Below are positions 4,307 through 20,708 of a DNA stretch of 36,786 nucleotides, piece after piece; within the stretch, counting starts at the first letter, position 1, and every line of letters starts with the position of its first letter. The stretch spans positions 1-36,786 of the forward strand of contig NIVC01002715.1 in the NCBI GenBank assembly GCA_002269645.1, written 5' to 3'. Below the pieces are notes generated by a model that was not told the origin of the DNA, made no database searches, and was given only the letters and a program-made list of their open reading frames with translations. The translations under genes were made by a program, and so were the position numbers. This stretch comes from Macrostomum lignano (taxonomy: Eukaryota).

Positions 4307-4699
4307 ACATAGGCAGGTATACGGACTAACGCTTTGAAATAGTGAGCGGATTTCAGTTAGTAATTAAACGTACAGAACAAATGACCCATGAGATCGTGAG
4401 AATACGGCGAGTAAAATGTCTAAGTTTTCCAGGAAATGCTAGCTTATTATTTTTCAACAACAATTTACGTAAAATCGAAATTAGTTTCTCATAAAATCTG
4501 TCATCCGTGTCAGTCCGTACTAGCAAGTGTTTTTCATGGGCAAGAGGGCAATGATGAAGCGCAAACATGGCAAAACAAAGTTTTTAATTGTCTGACTACG
4601 ACACTACGTGGACATCCTTAGTAAAAGCTTGTGGCACTGGAGGCGTACACTGGCCACGTAACACGCCCCAGTGCGAAATGTCTAAAAATAGAATACGCA

Positions 4700-4815
4700 G
4701 GGAACTCCCGTAGACCGTATTTGGCAGTGTTCGTCAGATTATTAGTTTGGAGTGCCCGAGCGCGCCCGCGGAATTCCCGGGCAAAGCAGGGCAGTCTAGA
4801 AGAACTCTATATAAG
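4700..4815 (+). promoter_or_regulatory. Putative promoter of the ankyrin gene: two kB-like sites and a TATA box
   Basis: GGGAACTCCC at 4700-4709 matches GGGRNYYYCC. CGGAATTCCC at 4769-4778 is one mismatch from consensus. TATATAAG at 4808-4815 lies ~90 bp before the ATG. Confidence 0.45.
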
Positions 4816-4901
4816 CATTAGCGGCTCAGTCATGACTGGAATGCAACTAGCAACCCTCAGGAAGGCCTCACAGACGCATATATCAAAGAAACGATTTGAG
4901 C

Positions 4902-5570
4902 ATGGCACCAAGAAGCTGCAAATCAGCTGACGACAGAAATAAACTGCGAGACGTCGCCGCAAGAGTCATGAAACTGCGCCAGGTGTGCTCCGAGTCCCAG
5001 TGGCTGCAGTTCGTCAGCGAGCACCGCCGCGCCATTCGCACCCTGATGTCGCAGCGCAGACTCTGTTATCCGATTGCTGACGCCATCGGGCGCGGCAGCG
5101 AGGACGAGGCCATCGAAGCGCTTCGACAAAGCGACCATCTGGGCGTCTGGACTTTGACGGAACGCTGGCGAGGTCCTGGACTCGAGTCGCTGCTGATGCT
5201 GGCCGTGTGGGCGGGAATGTCGAGGTTGGTCGCCGAGCTGGTCAGCCGAAACCCCAGCCAGGTGTTTCGGCTGTACGACAGCAGGGGCCGAAACGCTCTG
5301 CACTACTGCTTTGCGGCTCAAAGCGAGTCCTGCCTGGTAGCCGTGCTCAGAGAGTTCCGCGCGGCCCTCATGAAGAATACGACAGCTGGTGCGGTGCCGC
5401 TGCTCCGGGGCCTTCTGGCGGCGATCAGGATGCCGGACTGCGACGGGGCAACGCCGGCCGCAGTGAATCCTCTGGAGCGAATGTCCAGAACTCTGGACGC
5501 AGCTGCTGCTGCTGCAGAATCCGCTTTGTCGGCTTCGATGACCGCCCTGTCCGCTGCTGCAGCGGCATAA
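4902..5570 (+). CDS. Small ankyrin-repeat protein (~222 aa, about 2-3 divergent ANK repeats, Ala-rich C-terminal tail), apparently single exon
   Basis: ANK-like segments ESLLMLAVWAGMSRLVAELV and DSRGRNALHYCFAAQSESCLVAVL, plus PDCDGATPA. First ATG is at 4902 (the track start at 4896 is TTG). TATA lies upstream and AATAAA at ~5813. Confidence 0.75.
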   Translation: MAPRSCKSADDRNKLRDVAARVMKLRQVCSESQWLQFVSEHRRAIRTLMSQRRLCYPIADAIGRGSEDEAIEALRQSDHLGVWTLTERWRGPGLESLLMLAVWAGMSRLVAELVSRNPSQVFRLYDSRGRNALHYCFAAQSESCLVAVLREFRAALMKNTTAGAVPLLRGLLAAIRMPDCDGATPAAVNPLERMSRTLDAAAAAAESALSASMTALSAAAAA

Positions 5571-6046
5571 GGGGGTGAGCTCGGCCACCACCAGATTCTG
5601 GACTGCCATGGCTGGCTGCAACTTACCTGTAGCTTTTACAATAATGGCGTATATCCGCATACTGATTCTGAACGCAGTGAAACTCTTCCAAACCCGCATT
5701 AGCCTTTCAACTGCCCACTAGGCCTTTCTGATTACGCGTGTTAGTAAATTTATGCACCACACTTCACTTTTACTGTTTTGTTTGCTGAAAAAAACTTTTA
5801 TTCGAGTGTTTAATAAATAACGTACAGTGTGCACTGCTAAACACTACAGCACCGTCAAGCAATTTACTGCGAAAAAATATAAATGACAGGTGGCGTAAAT
5901 TGCTGATTTTTATTTGCTTCTTGCCTCTTGTGATTAGATAAAATCGTTGCGTATCTGCGATTTTATGGTTGTTAAGCGCAGCTGTTTGACACTGATCTGG
6001 ATGGATGTACCTTGTGTAGGTCAATCGGTGCGTTTTTAGAGGTGCG

Positions 6047-7563
6047 TCAGTGAATGTGTCAGTGTGTGTTATGGGTGTGTCAGTGTGTGTTATGGGGGCG
6101 TGTCAGTGTGTGTTATGAGGCGTGTCAGTGTGTGTTATGAGGCGTGTCAGTGTGTGTTATGGGGCGTGTCAGTGTGTGTTATGGGGCGTGTCAGTGTGTG
6201 TTATGGGGCGTGTCAGTGTGTGTTATGGGGCGTGTCAGTGTGTGTTATGGGCGTGTCAGTGTGTGTTATGGGGCGTGTCAGTGTGTGTTATGGGCGTGTC
6301 AGTGTGTGTTATGGGCGTGTCAGTGTGTGTTATGGGCGTGTCAGTGTGTGTTATGGGGCGTGTCAGTGTGTGTTATGGGGCGTGTCAGTGTGTGTTATGG
6401 GCGTGTCAGTGTGTGTTATGGGCGTGTCAGTGTGTGTTATGGGGCGTGTCAGTGTGTGTTATGGGCGTGTCAGTGTGTGTTATGGGGCGTGTCAGTGTGT
6501 GTTATGGGCGTGTCAGTGTGTGTTATGGGCGTGTCAGTGTGTGTTATGGGGCGTGTCAGTGTGTGTTATGGGCGTGTCAGTGTGTGTTATGGGGCGTGTC
6601 AGTGTGTGTTATGGGCGTGTCAGTGTGTGTTATGGGCGTGTCAGTGTGTGTTATGGGGCGTGTCAGTGTGTGTTATATGCGTGTCAGTGTGTGTTATGGG
6701 CGTGTCAGTGTGTGTTATGCGTGTCAGTGTGTGTTATGGGCGTGTCAGTGTGTGTTATGAGGCGTGTCAGTGTGTGTTATGGGCATGTCGTGTCAGTGTG
6801 TGTTATGGGCGTGTCAGAGTGTGTTGTGTGTCAGTGGCCTGTCAGTGTGTGTTATGGGCGTGTCAGTGTGTGTTATGGGGCGTGTCAGTGTGTGTTATGG
6901 GGCATGTCAGTGTGTGTTATGGGGCATGTCAGTGAATGTGTCAGTGTGTGTTATGGGGTGTGTCAGTGAATGTGTCAGTGAATGTGTCAGTGTGTGTTAT
7001 GGGGTGTGTCAGTGAATGTGTCAGTGAATGTGTCAGTGTGTGTTATGGGGCATGTCAGTGAATGTGTCAGTGTGTGTTATGGGGCGTGTCAGAGTGTATT
7101 AAGGTGCGTGTCAGTGAATGTGTCAGTGTGTGTTATGCGGCGTGTCGGTGAATGTTTCAGTGTGTATTTTGGGGCGTGTCAGTGAATGTGCTTGTGTGTG
7201 TTATGGGGTGTGTCAGTGGATGTGCTTGTGTGTGTTATGGGGTGTGTCAGTGAATGTGTCAGTGAATGTGTCAGTGTGTGTTATGGGGTGTGTCAGTGAA
7301 TGTGTCAGTGAATGTGTCAGTGTGTGTTATGGGGTGTGTCAGTGAATGTGTCAGTGAATGTGTCAGTGTGTGTTATGGGGTGTGTCAGTGAATGTGTCAG
7401 TGAATGTGTCAGTGAATGTGTCAGTGTGTGTTAACGGGTGTGTCAGTGAATGTGTCTGTGTGTGTTATGGGGTGTGTCAGTGAATGTGTCAGTGTGTGTT
7501 AACGGGTGTGTCAGTGAATGTGTCAGCGTATGTTATGGGTGTGTCAGTGACTTTTCAGTGAAT
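6047..7563. repeat. Minisatellite, 21-22 bp unit GTGTCAGTGTGTGTTATGGG(G)C, grading into 12-bp GTGTCAGTGAAT units at the 3' end
   Basis: Direct reading. All ORFs called here are repeat translations. Confidence 0.96.
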
Positions 7564-7981
7564 GTGCCTGTGTTTTGCTGGTTGATATGCTTGGTTAGTC
7601 AAAGAGGAAACAATAAAAGATATGCAAAAAAACTCAAGAGAGTCCAAATGTTTGTTATAACTCATTTTTAATTGTACTAAAACTTACTTAGCCACCAACG
7701 AGCACTTGAGCCCTTCCTGCTGAGCCTTTCCTGGTACAAAATTTGCCCTTTTTAGACTTTATTCGGTCTTCCAATCGACTCTCCCTTTTTGCCAGTTAGA
7801 AATCCTCACGGGGTTGGAATCCACACTAATTGAAAGTGAAATTAAAATTATTTTCTGTTGGATTTCGAATGTACGAGCTACATGTACTTTACGCGTGCAT
7901 TTTACGCGTACATATTTTCTGCGAAACGTAGTTGTCCACTCTTTCCCTTTCCCATCCCATCCGGGCCTTGGGTTGAGGAGG

Positions 7982-9033
7982 TCATGGAGACGTCAGTCCC
8001 TCGTCACGCCGCTGCTCCACCTCCGTCTCCAGGTAGACGCAGCCGTTCCTCGCAAACAACGTCACGAGCCGGTCGGTCCCCACGAATTGCAGCAAAACTC
8101 CGTCCCGCTTTCGCCAATTGACGGCTGCTGAGCGATGAAACTTGCCCTGACAACCAAGTCCTCCGTGTGGCGCTGCCGATGCAGCAGGTGGAAGGTGACT
8201 CTGGCGACAAACGGCCAATCCCACATGTCGTCGAGTTCGGTCTGGACGAGCTCTAGCTGAGTAGTCACGTGACTACGGTCGGCGTCCGCCTGTCCGTTGA
8301 GAAACAACCTGACACGGAACTTGCGGCCGTATCGCTGGGTCATGAAAGGCGGAGACAGCAGACAGGCTGACGGGTTGCTCGCCGCCTCCCGCAGTCTGTC
8401 GGCGATGCCAGTGACTTTCCACAGCAGGCAACCGTCATAAGAGATCTGCTCCAGGGTCTCAACGCGTCGCGTGATTCTGCGCAGCTCCTGCTGTTCACTC
8501 GCTTTTAGTTTGGCTTGCACGCAATGCAACAGGGTCCTGAGACCGCTGGCTCCGCCAAACTCCTTCATCAAGCCCTCGATGGCAATGGTTGTCAGAGCCC
8601 AATCAGCTAAACTAGGCTGAATTCTCTTCAACGCAGCAAACAATCGCAATACGTTTTGCTCCCCAGACCGAATTTCTCATGCTGTAGGCTGCAGGGGATC
8701 CAGGGCTGAGGCCTTGAACTCATCGCAGATGAGCTCCAGATACTTTTCCGCCCCAACAGCGTAGTGGCCATTCAAATTCTCTTGAGTACTCTGGAAATCG
8801 CACCCGAGACGGCAGAATCTGCAACTAACCAGCTTCTTGGGGCACTCGGCCTTGTGACGCTGAAGATCATACGGATTGAATGAACCTTCGTGACAGAGCG
8901 CGCACTCAATGACTTCATCGCAAGCGATCCCCGATGATTGGCGCAGTTGACTGGCGACTTCCCTGGGAAGCTCCATGGATTCAGGAAGGTCAGCAGCTGC
9001 TATTTTTGCGGTCTGGTACTTTGACGGTTGCAT
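7982..9033 (-). pseudogene. TRAF-family gene (TRAF zinc fingers, coiled coil, MATH/TRAF-C domain; no RING seen), interrupted by one in-frame TGA and one frameshift
   Basis: Zn fingers CALC-x12-H-x3-C and CRFCRLGC. MATH motifs SYDGCLLWKV, SPPFMTQRYGRKFRVRLFLNG and DWPFVARVTFHLL. ORFs 8677-9033 and 8062-8649 share a frame, separated only by TGA at 8677-8679 (PTA*EIRSGEQNVLRLF). The TRAF C-terminal strand LQFVGTDRLVTLFARNGCVYLETEVEQ continues in another frame from ~8100 to the stop at 7982. The lesions could be sequence errors. Confidence 0.8.
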
Positions 9034-9916: not shown

Positions 9917-12900
9917 TCAAAGCTTCAGCTCAGAACCGATCATTTGTTGCCACATTGCTCCTGCTAGCTGCCACTTTCGCTGCAGTTCCTCCGTCAGCCA
10001 TCGGGGAAGCGCCACATTCAAACTGAGCAGCTTCTCAAAAATGAGCAGATCCGTTTTGGGCTGGACAGAAAACAGGGCAGCAACCAGCAGCTCCTGAATA
10101 TCCGCGTCCTCCCGCTCAGCCACAGATTGGATCCAGGCCTTGGCATGGCGGACTTCGCTGTCGGGTAGCAGCTCAAGTCTCAAGGCCCACAGCAGTGCAT
10201 CGAAGTTTAAGTAGAAATAATCTGCGCCACTATGAAATTTGAGCGGGAAACACTTGATCAGAACTCCAGTTAAAAAAATTAATTTTGGGCGCCTTTCGAA
10301 CTCGAAGCAGAACTTCCACGCGGAGTCCCGGCTCCTCAGATGCCACCACACAAACTCCGTGGTCGCCTCGGTCGCCGACCTCTCAGCGGACCAAGCGATG
10401 CCTCTGCTCACCGAGAGGCCTCTGCACTGGCTCACGATTCTCTCTGCAGTTCCTCGGTAGCCGAACTTCAGGCAGGCCAGCGCTCTGAGAGCCTCCCGAG
10501 CTGAGCCGGTGCAGTCTGGCAGTCTGGCAATCAGCTCTGTGAGCGACTCCTGAGACAGCGGGCTGCAGTCACCATGGGAGAGACGCACCAGACACTCCCT
10601 CACCACGTCGTAGATCTCGTGGTACTCGACAGTGTTTGAGTTTGGCAAAGACCTCAAAACTAAAACTGGCAGGGTTTGGAACGGGTGGAAGTAGAATATC
10701 CCAGACTCATCCACAGGTCTCAGACTGCTCATGAACTGCTGCAGCAGCTGAGGCAGCCGATCAATCACTGTTCTCAGTGTGCTCGCGATGCTGCCCAGAG
10801 TCTGGTCCATGCTTCCGTCTTTCCCCACTGCACCCTTGAGGTACACAGCGACGTCGCTCAGGAAGAAGTGCTCCATGATCCGGCCGTGAGCATTGTCGGG
10901 CGAGCGACTGCTCTCCACACAGTCAAGCAGCATCTGCAGAGACCTCCTCACGAGACTCACGAGGTTCTCCGGCTTCCACTGTTCGACCGGCGTCTCCTCC
11001 ACCATTCGGAACGTGATGGACTTCACATGGTACGGCTTGAGGCCTTGCTGGTTGAAGCCGTCCTTGCTGCAGATGACCTTCTTGACCAGGTACTTAAGAG
11101 TGACGAACAGCTGGCCTTGGAGAGTAGTGAGACTTCTGAGCATCCGCTTCTCCAGGAAGCTGGTGCTCACACGGAGCTCCTGGCCTCCTCGACTAGGAGA
11201 GGCTGCGTGCACCACGTGACAGGGCGTTGAGTCAGAGTCGACAACCCTCTGGAGGGCCTGCAGCACCGGCTTTGGGATGTTCGATCGGGAGATTCGATGG
11301 GGCTGGAGAGGCGCGATGGGCGGGTAGCGGCAGCAGCGGCCAGCAGAAACCCTGTCCATGGCTGGCCTCAGTGCCGAACCGTCTGACGGCAGAGCAGGAT
11401 TCGATGCTGCAATGGCAGTATGAGATGCATCGTAATTGACGCATTGCATGAAAATGAATCTAATATAATTACTTCAATAATTTGTTATAATTACTAAGAA
11501 AAACCTGGCAGTCGTCGATTTTGTTAAGCTGCCAAACCAAAGCAAGGATTAATTCATCATCTTTTATTCAAATAGAATTGAAACTCACAGTATCCTTTAC
11601 ACTGAAGATGCCCATTGCTCAACTCATGCTGGACTGGATGTCCGCTGCACTTGCATATGCCTGTCGGGTGGTACAGCTTTCCAGGAATCAGCTCCATCAC
11701 ATCAATGTCTGAAGCGACGTCAGTTCTGCCGTCCAGTGTTTTCAGATTGTTTCCCCAGCCTTCAGAGTAGCTGCCAACCACAAAGCGCTTGTCGTAATCC
11801 TGCCTCCTTCTCAGGATCTCCTGCAAGACGTCGGCAACTGCGCTCTGCAAAGCGGCTCTGGAGTCCACAAATCCTGCATGAATAAGCATCGAGTGCAGCT
11901 GCAGGCCAAGTGGATTGCTTGGATTGTCTCTGAAATCGCGTATGGTTAATTTTTTATGTGATTTTAGATACATTTCGATCCTATGCTTCAAGTTTGACTC
12001 GTTTTTTTTAAATCCAACTTTACCTGATCTCAGAAATCGATAAATCTGCTTCGTGCAAATTTTCATCCAGTGAGCAAACAGATTTACTCATGTCTGCCTG
12101 TGCCAGCATGAGCAATCTAACGACATGTCGGTGACCCTTCAGTGATGCAATCTGTAGAGGCGAGCAGCCGTCGTTTCGCTGAAGATTTACGTCAGCCTGG
12201 GCTTTTATGAGTAAATCTACGATTTCTTGATGGCCTCTGCGTGCCGCAATGAACAGAGGCGTTTCGCCTGCGTTACTTTGAACATTGACGTTGGCTTGTG
12301 CTCTGATGAGCAAAACCACTACTTGCTGGTGGCCATTGTGGGATGCAATGTGGAGTGGCGAAGTTCCGTTTTGAAGTTGGAAATCAACGTTGGCACTCGT
12401 TCTGAGGAGTGACGTCACAACTTGCTGATGTCCATTTTGTGATGCCACAAAGAGAGACGACTCACCGGTTTTTCTTGAAAGATTAACATCGGCTTTGGCT
12501 TCTATGAGCAAATGGACAACTTGGAGATGACTCAGATGAAGGCAATGTATAGAGGCGACTCGCCCGAGTTTCGTTGGAGATTAACATCTGCTTGGGCTTT
12601 GATGAGCACTTCTACCACTAGCTGATGACCATTCTGTGAAGCAATGTAAAGAGGGGACTCTCCAGTGTTGAGTTGAAGATTGACGTTGGCTTGTGATTTT
12701 ACGAGCAATGTCACCACACGATGATGACCATTCTGTGAAGCAATATAGATAGGTGACTCGCCAGTGTCTCTTTGAAAATTAACATCTGCTTTTGCAGTGA
12801 TGAGTGACTCGGCAATTTCGCTATGACCCTCATGCGACGCTATATAAAGCGGCGACTCGCCAGTGTCTCTTCGAGTATTGACGTCTGCTTGCGCTTTGAT

Positions 12901-14493
12901 GAGCAAGTCTACGACTCTTTTGTTATTATTTTGCGACGCAATGTATATGGGTGAGCATCTGTCGGTCTGTTGAAGATTGATATCAGCCTGGGCTTTGATG
13001 ACGGAGTTAACTATTTGGTGATGTCCATTTTGCGAAGCAAGAAAGAGAGGCGAGCAGCCATAAATATCTTCTTGGAGATTGACATCTGCTTGAGCCTTTA
13101 TCAGCGAGTCAACGATTTGATGGTGGCCTTTGTGAGACGCAATTATCAGAGCTGTTTCACCCGTGTTTCGCTGATGATTAACGTCGGCTTGCGCTTTTAT
13201 TAGTGAGTCCACGACTTTGCGATGACCGTTCTGCGATGCGATGTAGAGTGGTGACGAGCCATTAACGATCTCTTGACGATCGATGTGTGCCTGCGCCTTA
13301 ATGAGGGATCCAGCAATTCGTTGATGACCGTTCTGCGATGCAATATGAAGTGGGGAAATTCCGTCCCTATTTTGAAGATCGATATCGACTAAAGCAGTTA
13401 TGAGTAAATCCAGCACTTCCTGATGACCTTGTTGGGACGCAATGTAGAGAGCTGATGAGCCATTTACTCGCTCCTGAAGATTGACGTCGGCTTGCGCTTT
13501 AATGAGCGAGGTCACTACCTGCCAATGCCCCTGTTGTGCTGCGATGTACATAGGCGAGCAGCCATGAATGTTTTTCAGATTGACGTCCGCTTTTCCTTTA
13601 ACAAGCGATTCAACTATTTTCCGATGACCTTTGTGCGATGCGATGAAGACTGCCGATTCACCGGTACTGATTTGAAGGTCGACTTCCACTTGCGCTTTAA
13701 TAAGCGAGTCGACAATTTGGTCATAGCCTCGAATCGATGCAATATGGAGAGTTGATGGACTATTTGAATTCTTTCGAAGATTGGGATCGGCTTGCGCTTT
13801 GATAAGCAGATCGACTACTCGCTGATGACCGCTCTGGCACGCGATGAAGAGCGGTGACACCCCGCTGTCTCTTTGGAGATTGACGTCAGCTTGTGCCTTG
13901 ATGAGCGAGTCCACAACTTTTGCGTGGCCACTCTGTGCAGCGATATACAGCGGTGTGGTGCCATCGAAAAGTTGAAGGTTGACATCGGCGCGTGCTTTGA
14001 TGAGCGATTCAACGACCTTCTGGTGACCACAATGAGATGCTATTGTGAGAGGTGTGTCGCCAGTGTTTTGTTGAATATCTACATCAGCTCCCCCTTTAAT
14101 GAGTCGATCCACAATTTGCTGATGACCATTCTGGGATGCAATAATAAGAGGTGAAAAGCCGTTGACTTGATCTTGAAGATTGACACCAGCTTTAGCTCTG
14201 ACAAACATATCCACCACACGAACCTTGCCAAGAGCGCAGGCCAGATGCAGTGGGTAGAACCTTTGCCCACTCAAGGAAAGTTTTCTTGTTCTGTTAGCTG
14301 GATTTTTCAGGTAAAGCGCGATGCGCTCGAGGTCTTCAGTGTTGACCGCCTCGAGAACTTCTTCGTCGGTCATTTCTGATGCTCCATCCTGAGAGGCAGC
14401 CCTACCAAGGACTGCATCAGCAGCACAGCAACAGTTCTGAGGGTCGTCCAGAGTGACTTCATGAAGTGAGCTTTTCGAATTGGAGTCGCACAA
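9917..14493 (-). CDS. Ankyrin-repeat / cGAS-like (Mab-21 family) nucleotidyltransferase fusion, ANK-cGLR. Exons ~14493(or ATG 14373)-12024, 11929-11589, 11406-9917; one frameshift at ~12537
   Basis: 22 ANK repeats (PLxIASxxGH). Intron 12023-11930 (AG|GTAAAG...TTTCAG) joins EIR to DNPSNP in frame. Intron 11588-11407 (GTGAGT...TTGCAG) joins KGY to SSNPALP in frame. NTase motif VGSYSEGWG...SDIDVM and third acidic residue in MDRVSA. Mab-21 motifs RVSTSFLEKRML, LKPYHVKSITF and MEHFFL. AATAAA lies ~30 nt after the stop. Confidence 0.85.
11589..11929 (-). other. Exon encoding the NTase catalytic core of ANK-cGLR
   Basis: GSYSEG...SDID motif, flanked by consensus splice sites in compatible phases (2 and 1). 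Confidence 0.82.
12024..14493 (-). other. Ankyrin-array exon of ANK-cGLR (22 repeats; 1-nt frameshift inside repeat 18)
   Basis: ORF 12532-14493 ends PLYIAFI*. The shifted frame continues SHLQVVHLLIEAKADVN into ORF 12020-12511, and one added base restores the 33-aa periodicity. The track start at 14493 is TTG just after a possible acceptor AG; the first ATG is 14373. Confidence 0.88.
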
Positions 14494-19576: not shown

Positions 19577-19816
19577 ATGTTTCCAGTTGTCTCTCCAGGT
19601 TCTTATTACAAAGCGCACGAGCCTAATTACAAGAGTAAGTACCGATGCAAACTAGAATGCAGCGAGTACATGAGAAAATATTGGCCCGACGTTGATATCA
19701 ATGTCCCTAATATTAATCTAGCTCTCCAAAGACACTGGTTTCATAAGTATGGAGTAACCTACGTAAAAGATTACGACAGCTACTATAACTTTGTAGAAAT
19801 CATTAGACAATTGTGA
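19577..19816 (+). CDS. ORF79, Tyr-rich 79-aa hypothetical protein encoded in the TIR (copy 1)
   Basis: Intact in both TIRs. The copies differ by 4 synonymous changes and 3 conservative amino-acid changes (V/A, V/A, R/K). Confidence 0.65.
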   Translation: MFPVVSPGSYYKAHEPNYKSKYRCKLECSEYMRKYWPDVDINVPNINLALQRHWFHKYGVTYVKDYDSYYNFVEIIRQL

Positions 19817-19820
19817 TTTC

Positions 19821-20683
19821 TTACATTCTTTCAATGATCAACGTCAATACAAACTCTTCCCATTAAAATCAACGCCCATCCCATCTTCAGTCTCAAACTG
19901 TAGCACAATCTCGTGAATCTCCTTATTACTCAATACAACTCTTTTCACTGGATTTGGTTTCTCTACCACCATCTGTCCTCCAGCTACAGAGTTGGAGATG
20001 TTGTACAAAATATTAGTTCGCTTTCCCTTAAATACCCAATCAAGACTGAGATTAGTTCTGATTAGAATATTCAAACCCTTTACAATGTCTGCTATATTGG
20101 GTGCTAAGAACAAACCGCGTACACTTTCCCGGGCCATGCTAACGGCCCCCGATGCTTGAGTGACAGTCCGCGCTGTGGATTCTGCCTTATAAACTTTCTT
20201 CACGAATCCCAATTCCCTATACCAAGTGTCATCTTTAAACTCAACCTCCGCATCTTTGTGAACTTGCATGACCACTCTCATTACAGTGAGATCATAGGTT
20301 AGTTTAACAGGGAACAGTTTCTTCTCTGGCTTACTCATATCAGGTGTCTCAAAATGGCCTCTTTTAGTAAAGACGTTTTCTAGAAAGTAATTGTAGGTAT
20401 CCACACTTTGCGTGCTCACAGGGAATACCACAGGTTCTGCTGCTGCACCTTTCCATTTGTAATAAAACTTATTATTTGCTGCCGTCACATTGGGAACGTT
20501 TGACCAACCAGTGAAGTCGTTAAGATAGACATGGTAATTAGCACCTGGATCCAGGCGAATCGCCTGCTCTAATTTTTCAACAAACATCCCGTTTGAGTCA
20601 TTAATTCGCCCAGTTATTGTAATAGGAATGCTCTCCTTGGAGTGTGAAACAATGTTGTTTAGTCTTTCGGCTATAGCTTCCAT
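19821..20683 (-). CDS. Minor capsid protein (penton, Polinton PX); 1-nt frameshift near the C-terminus
   Basis: Penton-like motifs IRLDP..YHVYL, WSNVPNVTAANNKFYY, TNILYNI, EKP..V, IHEIVLQF.TEDG..VDFNG. The duplicate in the right TIR shows the intact end GEEFVLTLIIERM*, placing the stop at 19821-19823. Confidence 0.82.
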
Positions 20684-20708
20684 TTTTTTTCACCCACAAA
20701 AAAAATAT

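What the first reader, a model, noticed from the sequence alone, without database searches (positions are those of the whole stretch)
9917..14493. cGAS-like receptor fused to a 22-repeat ankyrin array (ANK-cGLR)
Seen: three track ORF groups join through two consensus introns and one 1-nt shift into a single ~1,400-aa protein: ANK x22, NTase core, Mab-21 helical domain and an extra C-terminal helical region. The acidic triad (SDID plus MDRV) is retained. Known: animal cGLRs make cyclic-dinucleotide second messengers after sensing nucleic acid. RNase L uses ankyrin repeats to bind 2-5A made by OAS, a member of the same NTase superfamily. Inference: the long ANK solenoid is a sensor or autoinhibitory module, so this cGLR could be gated by a protein (for example viral) or a nucleotide rather than by DNA/RNA. 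I know of no biochemical characterisation of this architecture, although such domain annotations may already exist in databases.
Basis: partly seen in the sequence, partly recalled or inferred. Interest (0 to 1): 0.85.

Follow-up and report, generated by a model that had tools for sequence, protein, structure and literature searches.

The report
Flatworm ankyrin-fused cGAS-like enzyme gene
This is one copy, probably broken or mis-assembled, of a large flatworm (Macrostomum) gene family that fuses a long ankyrin-repeat array to a cGAS-like signalling enzyme; the architecture is real and its function untested, but it is already catalogued in the literature.

Summary
On the minus strand, 14493-9917, four ORFs join through one 1-nt frame break and two GT-AG introns into a 1,433-aa product. 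It has 22 ankyrin repeats, a cGAS/Mab-21 nucleotidyltransferase with GS, SDID and MDRV motifs, the Mab-21 helical lobe and a ~280-aa family-specific C-terminal domain. Both introns are conserved in position and phase in Macrostomum lignano paralogues. A family profile aligns to bivalve Mab-21/cGLR proteins (hhalign 99.9%, E 3e-35) with all three catalytic motifs matched. An AF2 model of the closest paralogue (pLDDT 89.9) hits oyster Cv-cGLR1 and cGAS.

It is not new. Li et al. 2023 list ANK-cGLR as an architecture class, list M. lignano ANK-fused members, and cloned five ANK-less cores for their screen; no flatworm enzyme is among their reported actives.

This copy also has a probable second frame disruption near the start codon, so it may be a young pseudogene or an indel-prone assembly.

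The idea that the ANK array replaces nucleic-acid sensing is untested. The basic core (pI 9.1) argues mildly against it.

Verdict: new member of a known kind, moderate-to-low interest.

The parts
9917..14493 (-). Whole gene model: 3 coding exons, 1,433 codons including one X at the frame break, stop at 9919-9917
   Evidence: The model is in frame across both junctions. Paralogue proteins read straight through both junctions.
14370..14462 (-). Alternative-frame 30-codon ORF (MKSLWTTLRTVAVLLMQSLVG...). It is either the ancestral N-terminus now out of frame, or an upstream ORF. Its TGA overlaps the first main-frame ATG (14373-14371).
   Evidence: It resembles the N-termini of P0026, P0041 and P0042 (shuffle p 0.002 for P0041, 0.086 for P0042).
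14392..14399 (-). Probable second frame disruption: 8 nt lie between the part of P0026's N-terminus matched in the alternative frame and the part matched in the main frame
   Evidence: alignments. This is an inference.
12080..14271 (-). 22 ankyrin repeats (residues 75-805), 33-34 aa each, mean pairwise identity 50%
   Evidence: Pfam; repeat alignment.
12539..12540 (-). Frame break in ANK repeat 18: 2 nt where a codon is expected. The old frame ends at TGA 12534-12532.
   Evidence: three-frame translation.
12026..12079 (-). Non-repeat linker (VCSLDENLHEADLSISEI) at the end of exon 1
   Evidence: The linker is variable among paralogues.
11930..12023 (-). Intron 1, 94 nt, GT..AG, phase 2
   Evidence: There is an intron at the same position and phase in P0004 at L002 (105 nt).
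11589..11929 (-). Exon 2: N-terminal spine helix and first part of the NTase lobe. Contains GSYSEGWG (11775-11752), SDIDVM (11712-11695) and the His/Cys motif YHPTGICKC (11673-11647).
11407..11588 (-). Intron 2, 182 nt, GT..AG, phase 1 after 'KGY'
   Evidence: Same position and phase in L001 (370 nt) and L002 (80 nt).
11342..11365 (-). Third acidic residue block PAMDRVSA (aligns to D.V.A of Mab-21 proteins)
   Evidence: hhalign. D is present in 31 of 34 flatworm rows with a residue at this position and 24 of 24 bivalve rows.
10859..11101 (-). Mab-21_C helical lobe (Pfam PF20266, sub-threshold on this copy)
9920..10756 (-). Family-specific C-terminal domain (~280 aa), mostly helical, with no Pfam or PDB sequence match
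   Evidence: It is confidently folded in the paralogue model.

Best explanation
The locus is a paralogue of the Macrostomum (free-living flatworm) ANK-cGLR expansion. It encodes a single polypeptide with four parts: an N-terminal solenoid of 22 ankyrin repeats, a short linker, a cGAS/Mab-21-type nucleotidyltransferase with a complete catalytic signature, and a family-specific C-terminal helical domain.

By homology, intact members are signalling nucleotidyltransferases that make a nucleotide second messenger when activated. The catalytic core of this copy is basic, so it could still be nucleic-acid-activated like cGAS and other cGLRs. The ANK array is most likely a protein-binding regulatory module (partner or ligand recruitment, autoinhibition or assembly), not the catalytic switch itself.

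This copy carries one certain and one probable frame disruption. It is therefore either a very young pseudogene or a functional gene seen through an indel-prone assembly.

Shown: architecture, splice model, homology, fold (on a 70%-identical paralogue) and motif conservation. Inferred: enzymatic activity, the role of the ANK array and the activating ligand.
For: Gene model: it is in frame, and both introns are conserved in position and phase in M. lignano loci.

Fusion: many M. lignano proteins carry ANK plus Mab-21_C in one chain. A full-library profile search gives 84 cluster representatives at E<1e-30, many of 1,100-1,400 aa with the Mab-21 half at the C-terminus. P0041 (1,378 aa) is 50% identical to the model over 1,310 aa.

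Homology: the family profile against the PDB hits only cGLR1 (8gjy, E 5.9e-5) and cGAS. hhalign against bivalve Mab-21/cGLR proteins gives 99.9% probability and E 3e-35 over 302 columns, with GS, SDxDxM and D.V.A aligned. Those bivalve proteins carry Pfam PF03281 and PF20266.

Fold: the AF2 model of P0001 has pLDDT 89.9 and pTM 0.91. Foldseek's top hits are Cv-cGLR1 (8gjw, E 3.3e-7), cGAS, MAB21L1, MB21D2, Sp-cGLR1, MiD51 and CdnE.

Active site: GS+D+D+D is kept in 26 of the 30 flatworm rows that have a residue at the GS position.

Literature: Li et al. 2023 treat this flatworm family as cGLRs and ANK-cGLR as a class.

Charge: the core pI is 9.09.
Against: - No transcript data exist for this locus.
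- The frame break at 12540/12539 truncates the product inside the ANK array. A second frame problem is likely at the N-terminus.
- The neighbouring TRAF-like gene has an in-frame stop, which suggests a decaying region.
- Pfam does not detect the N-lobe. The lobe lacks about 60 residues found in bivalve relatives and has a ~10-residue insert between GS and DxD, so activity is not guaranteed.
- None of the five flatworm cores cloned by Li et al. is among the actives they describe.
- Triad geometry could not be measured because no coordinates are exposed.
Confidence: 0.7

Rival explanations
1. Dead copy: the locus is a recently inactivated pseudogene of the family and does nothing. The intact-looking motifs only reflect the youth of the lesion.
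For: There is one certain frameshift with a stop 6 nt later and a probable second frame disruption near the start. The exact ORFs are absent from a 15-billion-protein collection, and no protein in it is more than 68% identical. The adjacent TRAF-like gene has an in-frame TGA with no intron to remove it. A decayed mobile element lies nearby.
Against: The remaining 4.3 kb is open with every conserved motif retained. A comparable frame break occurs in the ANK array upstream of annotated P0004 in the public PacBio M. lignano assembly, so indel artefacts or tolerated polymorphisms are plausible. Only frame-type lesions are seen in this gene, with no nonsense or missense hits at key sites.
Confidence: 0.45
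2. One reading: the ANK solenoid is itself the sensor. It is gated by a pathogen protein or a nucleotide ligand instead of DNA/RNA, and it relieves autoinhibition of the NTase.
For: The most variable repeat positions (1, 2, 3, 5, 14) include the canonical ANK binding face. ANK length varies widely between paralogues. The ANK half diverges faster than the core (45% versus 58% identity to L002). The ANK-less cores screened with nucleic-acid ligands are not among the reported actives.
Against: The same positions are variable in ankyrin repeats generally (my own knowledge), so this does not discriminate. Positions 17, 18 and 21 on the outer helix vary as much. The core is basic (pI 9.09), as in nucleic-acid-sensing cGLRs. 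The repeats are not homogenised (50% aa identity; TRF finds only 3.4 copies at 74%). There is no direct evidence of any ligand.
Confidence: 0.2
3. Non-enzymatic scaffold: like MAB21L1 or MiD49/51, the Mab-21 fold is used as an adaptor or nucleotide-binding module, and the ANK array mediates assembly.
For: MAB21L1 and MiD51 are among the structural matches. The N-lobe is shortened and not recognised by Pfam. No flatworm core is reported as active. Planarians lack STING.
Against: GS and all three acidic residues are conserved across paralogues that are 50% or less identical. That is not expected for a non-catalytic scaffold. Li et al. classify the Mab21L1/2/3 genes as lacking a predicted functional active site, unlike this family.
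Confidence: 0.12
4. Two separate genes: an ANK protein and a Mab-21 protein that merely abut.
For: An ATG-initiated ORF (12066-11557) overlaps intron 1 and could in principle start a Mab-21-only product. Some paralogues are annotated without ANK, and no ANK lies within 10 kb upstream of P0001 in L001.
Against: The in-frame GT-AG junction has a conserved position and phase. Dozens of fused proteins come from two M. lignano annotation sets. The intron-encoded residues of that ORF have no counterpart in paralogues.
Confidence: 0.03

Closest known systems
ANK-fused cGLRs catalogued by Li et al. 2023 (PMC9980059): Fig. 1C/S2A class 'ANK-cGLR', Macrostomum lignano entries PAA86972.1, PAA45980.1, PAA68676.1 and others, and Stylophora pistillata ANK/death-domain cGLRs
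   Same: Ankyrin repeats lie N-terminal to a cGAS-like NTase with a complete predicted active site. The flatworm motif set is the same: GSxxEGWGNSL, SDIDx, RPxxDxxxA, LRVSTSFLE, GLKTYHxKT.
   Different: The window's core is only 31-37% identical to the five screened M. lignano constructs. Its array is long (22 repeats), and this copy is frame-disrupted. None of these proteins has a reported ligand or product.
Bivalve Mab-21/cGLR family, including Crassostrea virginica Cv-cGLR1 (PDB 8gjw)
   Same: Nearest non-flatworm relatives by profile (E 3e-35) and best structural match (E 3.3e-7). Shared motifs are GS..EG, SDxDxM, D.V.A..C..[WY]P, CHVV, [W/L]R[I/V]S.S..E and SYH.KT. Several are also fused to repeat modules (TPR).
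   Different: The flatworm N-lobe lacks about 60 residues between DxD and the third Asp and has a ~10-residue insert after GS. It also has its own His/Cys cluster and a different C-terminal domain, and it uses ANK rather than TPR repeats.
Vertebrate cGAS
   Same: Bilobal NTase plus helical fold, the catalytic GS/acidic triad and a basic core.
   Different: About 14-16% identity in structural alignment, and TM about 0.5 normalised to cGAS. The zinc-thumb position is not conserved, and there is no disordered basic N-terminus. ANK and C-terminal domains are added.
RNase L (ANK domain binds 2-5A made by OAS)
   Same: An ankyrin array occurs in a pathway that uses an NTase-superfamily second messenger.
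   Different: In RNase L the ANK domain sits on the receptor/effector (with kinase-like and KEN domains), not on the synthase. No such domains are found here. This is an analogy only.

Membership tests
cGAS-like receptor (cGLR) / Mab-21 NTase family | Bilobal cGAS/Mab-21 fold (Pol-beta-type NTase lobe plus helical lobe) | tested here: met
   The AF2 model of paralogue P0001 (70% identical to the window's core) has pLDDT 89.9. All 49 Foldseek PDB hits with E<=0.001 are cGLR, cGAS, MAB21L1, MB21D2, MiD51 or CD-NTase. The test was on the paralogue because the window's spliced model was not admissible. The window's exon 3 (the last coding exon) was a row of the alignment.
cGAS-like receptor (cGLR) / Mab-21 NTase family | Significant sequence/profile homology to Mab-21 NTase plus Mab-21_C | tested here: met
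   hhalign of the family profile against bivalve PF03281+PF20266 proteins gives 99.9% probability, E 3e-35, 302 columns. The profile against the PDB hits 8gjy at E 5.9e-5 and cGAS at about 1e-4. As a single sequence the window is only sub-threshold for PF20266 and gets no PF03281 hit.
cGAS-like receptor (cGLR) / Mab-21 NTase family | h[G]S motif preceding the first catalytic strand pair | tested here: met
   VVGSYSEGWG at 11775-11752. It aligns to GS..EG of the bivalve cGLRs.
cGAS-like receptor (cGLR) / Mab-21 NTase family | [DE]h[DE]h metal-binding pair | tested here: met
   SDIDVM at 11712-11695. It aligns to SDxDxM, and D/D are invariant in all flatworm rows covering the site.
cGAS-like receptor (cGLR) / Mab-21 NTase family | Third catalytic acidic residue on a later strand | tested here: met
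   AMDRV at 11365-11342 aligns to D.V.A. It lies in strand 126-135 of the paralogue model.
cGAS-like receptor (cGLR) / Mab-21 NTase family | Ligand-dependent synthesis of a nucleotide second messenger | not testable with these tools
   This needs biochemistry. Five ANK-less M. lignano cores were in Li et al.'s screen, and no flatworm enzyme is among the actives they describe.
cGAS-like receptor (cGLR) / Mab-21 NTase family | Cognate receptor (STING or other) in the same genome | not tested
Planarian S. mediterranea is reported to lack both cGAS and STING.
ANK-cGLR architecture class (Li et al. 2023) | Ankyrin repeats and the cGLR domain in one polypeptide | tested here: met
   The exon junction is in frame and conserved. 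Fused paralogue proteins come from two annotation sets. No transcript of this locus itself is available.
ANK-cGLR architecture class (Li et al. 2023) | Uninterrupted reading frame (functional gene) | tested here: not met
   There is a frame break at 12540/12539 with a stop at 12534-12532 and a probable second break near 14399-14392. Whether this is biological or an assembly artefact cannot be told.
Ankyrin repeat proteins | Tandem 33-residue ANK repeats recognised by Pfam | tested here: met
   PF00023 E 1.4e-113 and PF12796 E 1.2e-115. 22 repeats were aligned.
RNase L-like 2-5A receptor | ANK domain followed by pseudokinase and KEN ribonuclease domains | tested here: not met
   No kinase or KEN/ribonuclease Pfam hit in any part.

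The most novel reading that the evidence does not exclude
The ANK solenoid of this flatworm family is a direct receptor for a non-nucleic-acid ligand (for example a pathogen protein). Binding releases the cGAS-like core to make a nucleotide signal that is read by something other than STING. This would be a repeat-domain-gated cGLR pathway that expanded massively in one flatworm lineage, while planarians lost cGAS and STING altogether.
Probability: 0.12. Interest if true: 0.8.

Novelty: new member of a known kind. Interest (0 to 1): 0.35.

Why it matters
Repeat-domain-fused cGLRs (ANK, TPR) are catalogued, but none has a known ligand or product. They are the obvious place to look for cGLRs that sense something other than long double-stranded nucleic acid.

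Macrostomum is a tractable laboratory flatworm (RNAi and transgenesis are available; my own knowledge). It has dozens to hundreds of these genes, whereas planarians reportedly have neither cGAS nor STING. The family is therefore a reasonable entry point for two questions: what the ANK array does, and what reads the signal.

This locus adds little on its own. It is one more paralogue, probably disabled, and the architecture is already published.

Tried and rejected
I did not try to pass it any other way. I used the closest intact paralogue, with the window's unedited exon translation as an alignment row.
2. The first AF2 run with 12 sequences gave pLDDT 57.9, with the NTase core below 50. Its Foldseek hits were the right family but weak (E>=0.02). 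It was superseded by the 64-sequence run.
3. The single-sequence Pfam and PDB searches detect only the helical lobe, weakly.
4. The Foldseek viral library gave nothing at E<=0.001.
5. An exact look-up of ten window ORFs found none in the collection, so the source organism could not be fixed. The closest DNA is M. lignano paralogue loci at 69-76% identity.
6. I first suspected that VVDSDS rather than MDRV was the third acidic site. hhalign and the family alignment rejected this.
7. I considered a 17-nt 'intron' (GT..AG) to repair the N-terminal frame and rejected it as far too short.
8. TRAF linkage is not conserved at the paralogue loci L001 and L002.
9. The idea of recently homogenised ANK repeats (as in fungal NLR repeats) is not supported: 50% mean aa identity, and TRF sees only 3.4 copies at 74%.
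10. A literature search for functional or expression data on the Macrostomum family found none.
Full report
**Observation.** The minus strand between 14493 and 9917 holds four long ORFs.
- The first two are ankyrin arrays (Pfam Ank E 1.4e-113 and Ank_2 E 1.2e-115). They are separated by a frame break: after '...SPLYIA' two bases (12540-12539) stand where a codon is expected. The old frame stops at 12534-12532, and the repeat continues as 'HLSHLQVVHLLIEAKADVN' in another frame.
- Exon 1 ends at 12024 before GTAAAG. Exon 2 is 11929-11589. Exon 3 starts at 11406 after TTGCAG.
- Joined this way, the reading frame is continuous for 1,433 codons.
- I count exactly 22 repeats, residues 75-805.

**Is the gene model right?**
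- Paralogous proteins read straight through both junctions ('NGHIQCSGF|ASNPA', linker|'...LSxQLHSAL').
- At two Macrostomum lignano loci fetched from GCA_002269645.1, intron 2 lies at the same codon and phase (phase 1 after G[YF]; 370 nt in L001, 80 nt in L002).
- Intron 1 lies at the same place and phase in L002 (phase 2 after the linker; 105 nt).
- The fusion does not depend on one annotation. One search returned many M. lignano proteins with ANK plus Mab-21_C.
- The full-library profile search found 1,041 hits at E<=0.001 and 84 cluster representatives at E<1e-30. Many are 1,100-1,400 aa with the Mab-21 half at the C-terminus. P0041 (1,378 aa) is 50% identical to the model over 1,310 residues.

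**Is it a cGAS-like enzyme?**
- As a single sequence the evidence is thin. Mab-21_C scores 21.6-22.2 bits against a cut-off of 24.1, and there is no PF03281 hit. cGAS chains match at E 0.014.
- Profiles settle it. The family profile hits only Sp-cGLR1 (8gjy, E 5.9e-5) and cGAS in the PDB.
- hhalign against 41 distant relatives that carry PF03281+PF20266 gives 99.9% probability and E 3e-35 over 302 columns. GS aligns with GS, SDIDVM with SDxDxM, and RPAxDxVxA..YP with xDxVxA..WP. My alternative (VVDSDS) was wrong.
- These relatives are bivalve Mab-21/cGLR proteins, several of them TPR-fused.

**Structure.**
- Twelve sequences gave a poor model. Sixty-four gave pLDDT 89.9 and pTM 0.91.
- Foldseek then returned 49 PDB hits at E<=0.001, all of them cGLR, cGAS, MAB21L1, MB21D2, MiD51 or CD-NTase. 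The best was oyster Cv-cGLR1 (8gjw, E 3.3e-7).
- In the model the motifs sit canonically: strand 45-48, G49-S50 at a helix start, D71/D73 on strand 71-85, and D128 on strand 126-135.
- The GS+D+D+D signature is intact in 26 of the 30 flatworm rows with a residue at the GS position.
- Family peculiarities:
  - a ~10-residue insert between GS and DxD;
  - about 60 residues missing between DxD and the third Asp;
  - a near-invariant His/Cys set, YH-x4-C-x-C...NGH...C, retained in the window, which is a possible metal site (inference only);
  - a ~280-residue C-terminal domain without a Pfam or PDB sequence match.

**Is this copy alive?**
- Besides the ANK-18 frame break, the main frame has no ATG before residue 41.
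- An ATG at 14462-14460 in another frame opens 'MKSLWTTLRTVAVLLMQSLVG...'.
  - It matches the first part of P0026's N-terminus (MESLCSSVLRAAVAVLMQAVGG).
  - The main frame matches P0026's continuation (TDGQSSDVTDMEI versus QDGASEMTDEEV).
  - Eight bases (14399-14392) lie between the two matched parts.
  - That is probably a second frame disruption, or else an overlapping upstream ORF.
- The adjacent TRAF-like gene has an in-frame TGA with no intron to remove it.
- On the other side, the remaining 4.3 kb is open and keeps every conserved residue. The public PacBio assembly also shows a similar frame break in the ANK array upstream of annotated P0004.
- I cannot separate a young pseudogene from assembly indels. 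I put the pseudogene at about 0.45.

**What is already known.**
- Li et al. 2023 (PMC9980059) identified more than 3,000 cGLRs and report that 87% are stand-alone. They list ANK- and TPR-fused classes (Fig. 1C, S2A) and coral ANK/death-domain cGLRs.
- Their Table S2 lists M. lignano accessions with N-terminal Ank_2.
- Table S3 entries 89-93 are five M. lignano cores with the same motif set as the window, 31-37% identical to it.
- The 15 actives they describe come from insects, anemones, molluscs, hydras and corals.
[quoted passage not shown] A 2026 planarian study found neither cGAS nor STING in Schmidtea.
- I found no functional or expression paper on the Macrostomum family.

**Mechanism.**
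- Conservation of the catalytic signature across deep paralogues argues for an enzyme, not a MAB21L1/MiD51-type scaffold.
- The NTase+Mab-21_C core of this copy has pI 9.09, the ANK array 6.41 and the C-terminal domain 6.36. Li et al. associate pI above 8.5 with nucleic-acid-sensing cGLRs. Across paralogues the core pI ranges from 6.0 to 9.7, so ligands may differ between them.
- Variable ANK positions (1, 2, 3, 5, 14) include the usual binding face, but positions 17, 18 and 21 vary as much, and this pattern is generic to ANK repeats.
- The repeats are not homogenised.
- My best reading is a signalling NTase whose ANK array is a protein-binding regulatory module.

**Verdict.** This is a new member of a known kind, probably disabled. 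Interest is moderate-to-low for this locus. The family as a whole remains a worthwhile, uncharacterised target.

Noticed in passing
window 8062-9033 (-): A TRAF-like gene lies ~880 bp downstream of the cGLR stop on the same strand. It has a zf-TRAF part (8680-9033) and a TRAF/MATH part (8065-8649) in the same frame, separated by an in-frame TGA (8679-8677) with no GT..AG around it. It looks nonsense-disrupted. No TRAF lies next to the paralogues in L001 or L002.
   Followed up: partly
window ~19800-30600: Remnant of a Maverick/Polinton-type element. It has a Pox_A32-like packaging ATPase (23606-24601, +) and a protein-primed family-B DNA polymerase split over at least four overlapping ORFs (26863-30541, -). 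ORFs 19844-21353 (-) have no Pfam hit. I looked only at separate pieces and did not assemble anything.
   Followed up: partly
window 6055-7573: A ~1.5-kb minisatellite with unit ~21 bp (GTGTCAGTGTGTGTTATGGGC; higher-order periods 43, 64 and 150). It explains the GC skew of +0.63 and the spurious 200-300-aa ORFs there.
   Followed up: yes
window 14370-14462 (-): The stop of the alternative-frame N-terminal ORF overlaps the first main-frame ATG (aaATGAcc). Paralogue N-termini are short, hydrophobic and Cys-rich (for example MGFLQRLFSAVAACCLRVFG in P0007), which could be a lipidation or membrane-anchor signal.
   Followed up: partly
window 11647-11673, 11602-11619, 11318-11335 (-): A flatworm-specific near-invariant His/Cys set (YH-x4-C-x-C, NGH, C-[RC]-YP) sits in the shortened N-lobe. 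It is absent from bivalve relatives and may be a metal-binding site at a different position from the cGAS zinc thumb.
   Followed up: partly
L002 4640-6885: In the public M. lignano assembly, about eight more ANK repeats lie upstream of the annotated start of P0004 (PAA59246.1) in another frame (ORF 4640-5506 versus 5482-6885). The 890-aa annotation is therefore probably truncated by a frame break.
   Followed up: partly
P0031 and P0199 (database proteins): Two family relatives are labelled as bacterial MAG proteins (Kangiellaceae; Candidatus Thiodiazotropha) on contigs of 1-3 kb. They look like animal (flatworm or bivalve host) DNA binned into MAGs.
   Followed up: no
P0039 (1,346 aa), P0053 (3,379 aa), P0202 (3,199 aa): Some family members have two Mab-21 stretches or are very long. 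They may be tandem-cGLR fusions or merged gene models.
   Followed up: no
window 4896-5570 (+): A 224-aa ORF with a weak Ank_2 match (E 0.008) in a GC-rich stretch. Its significance is unclear.
   Followed up: no
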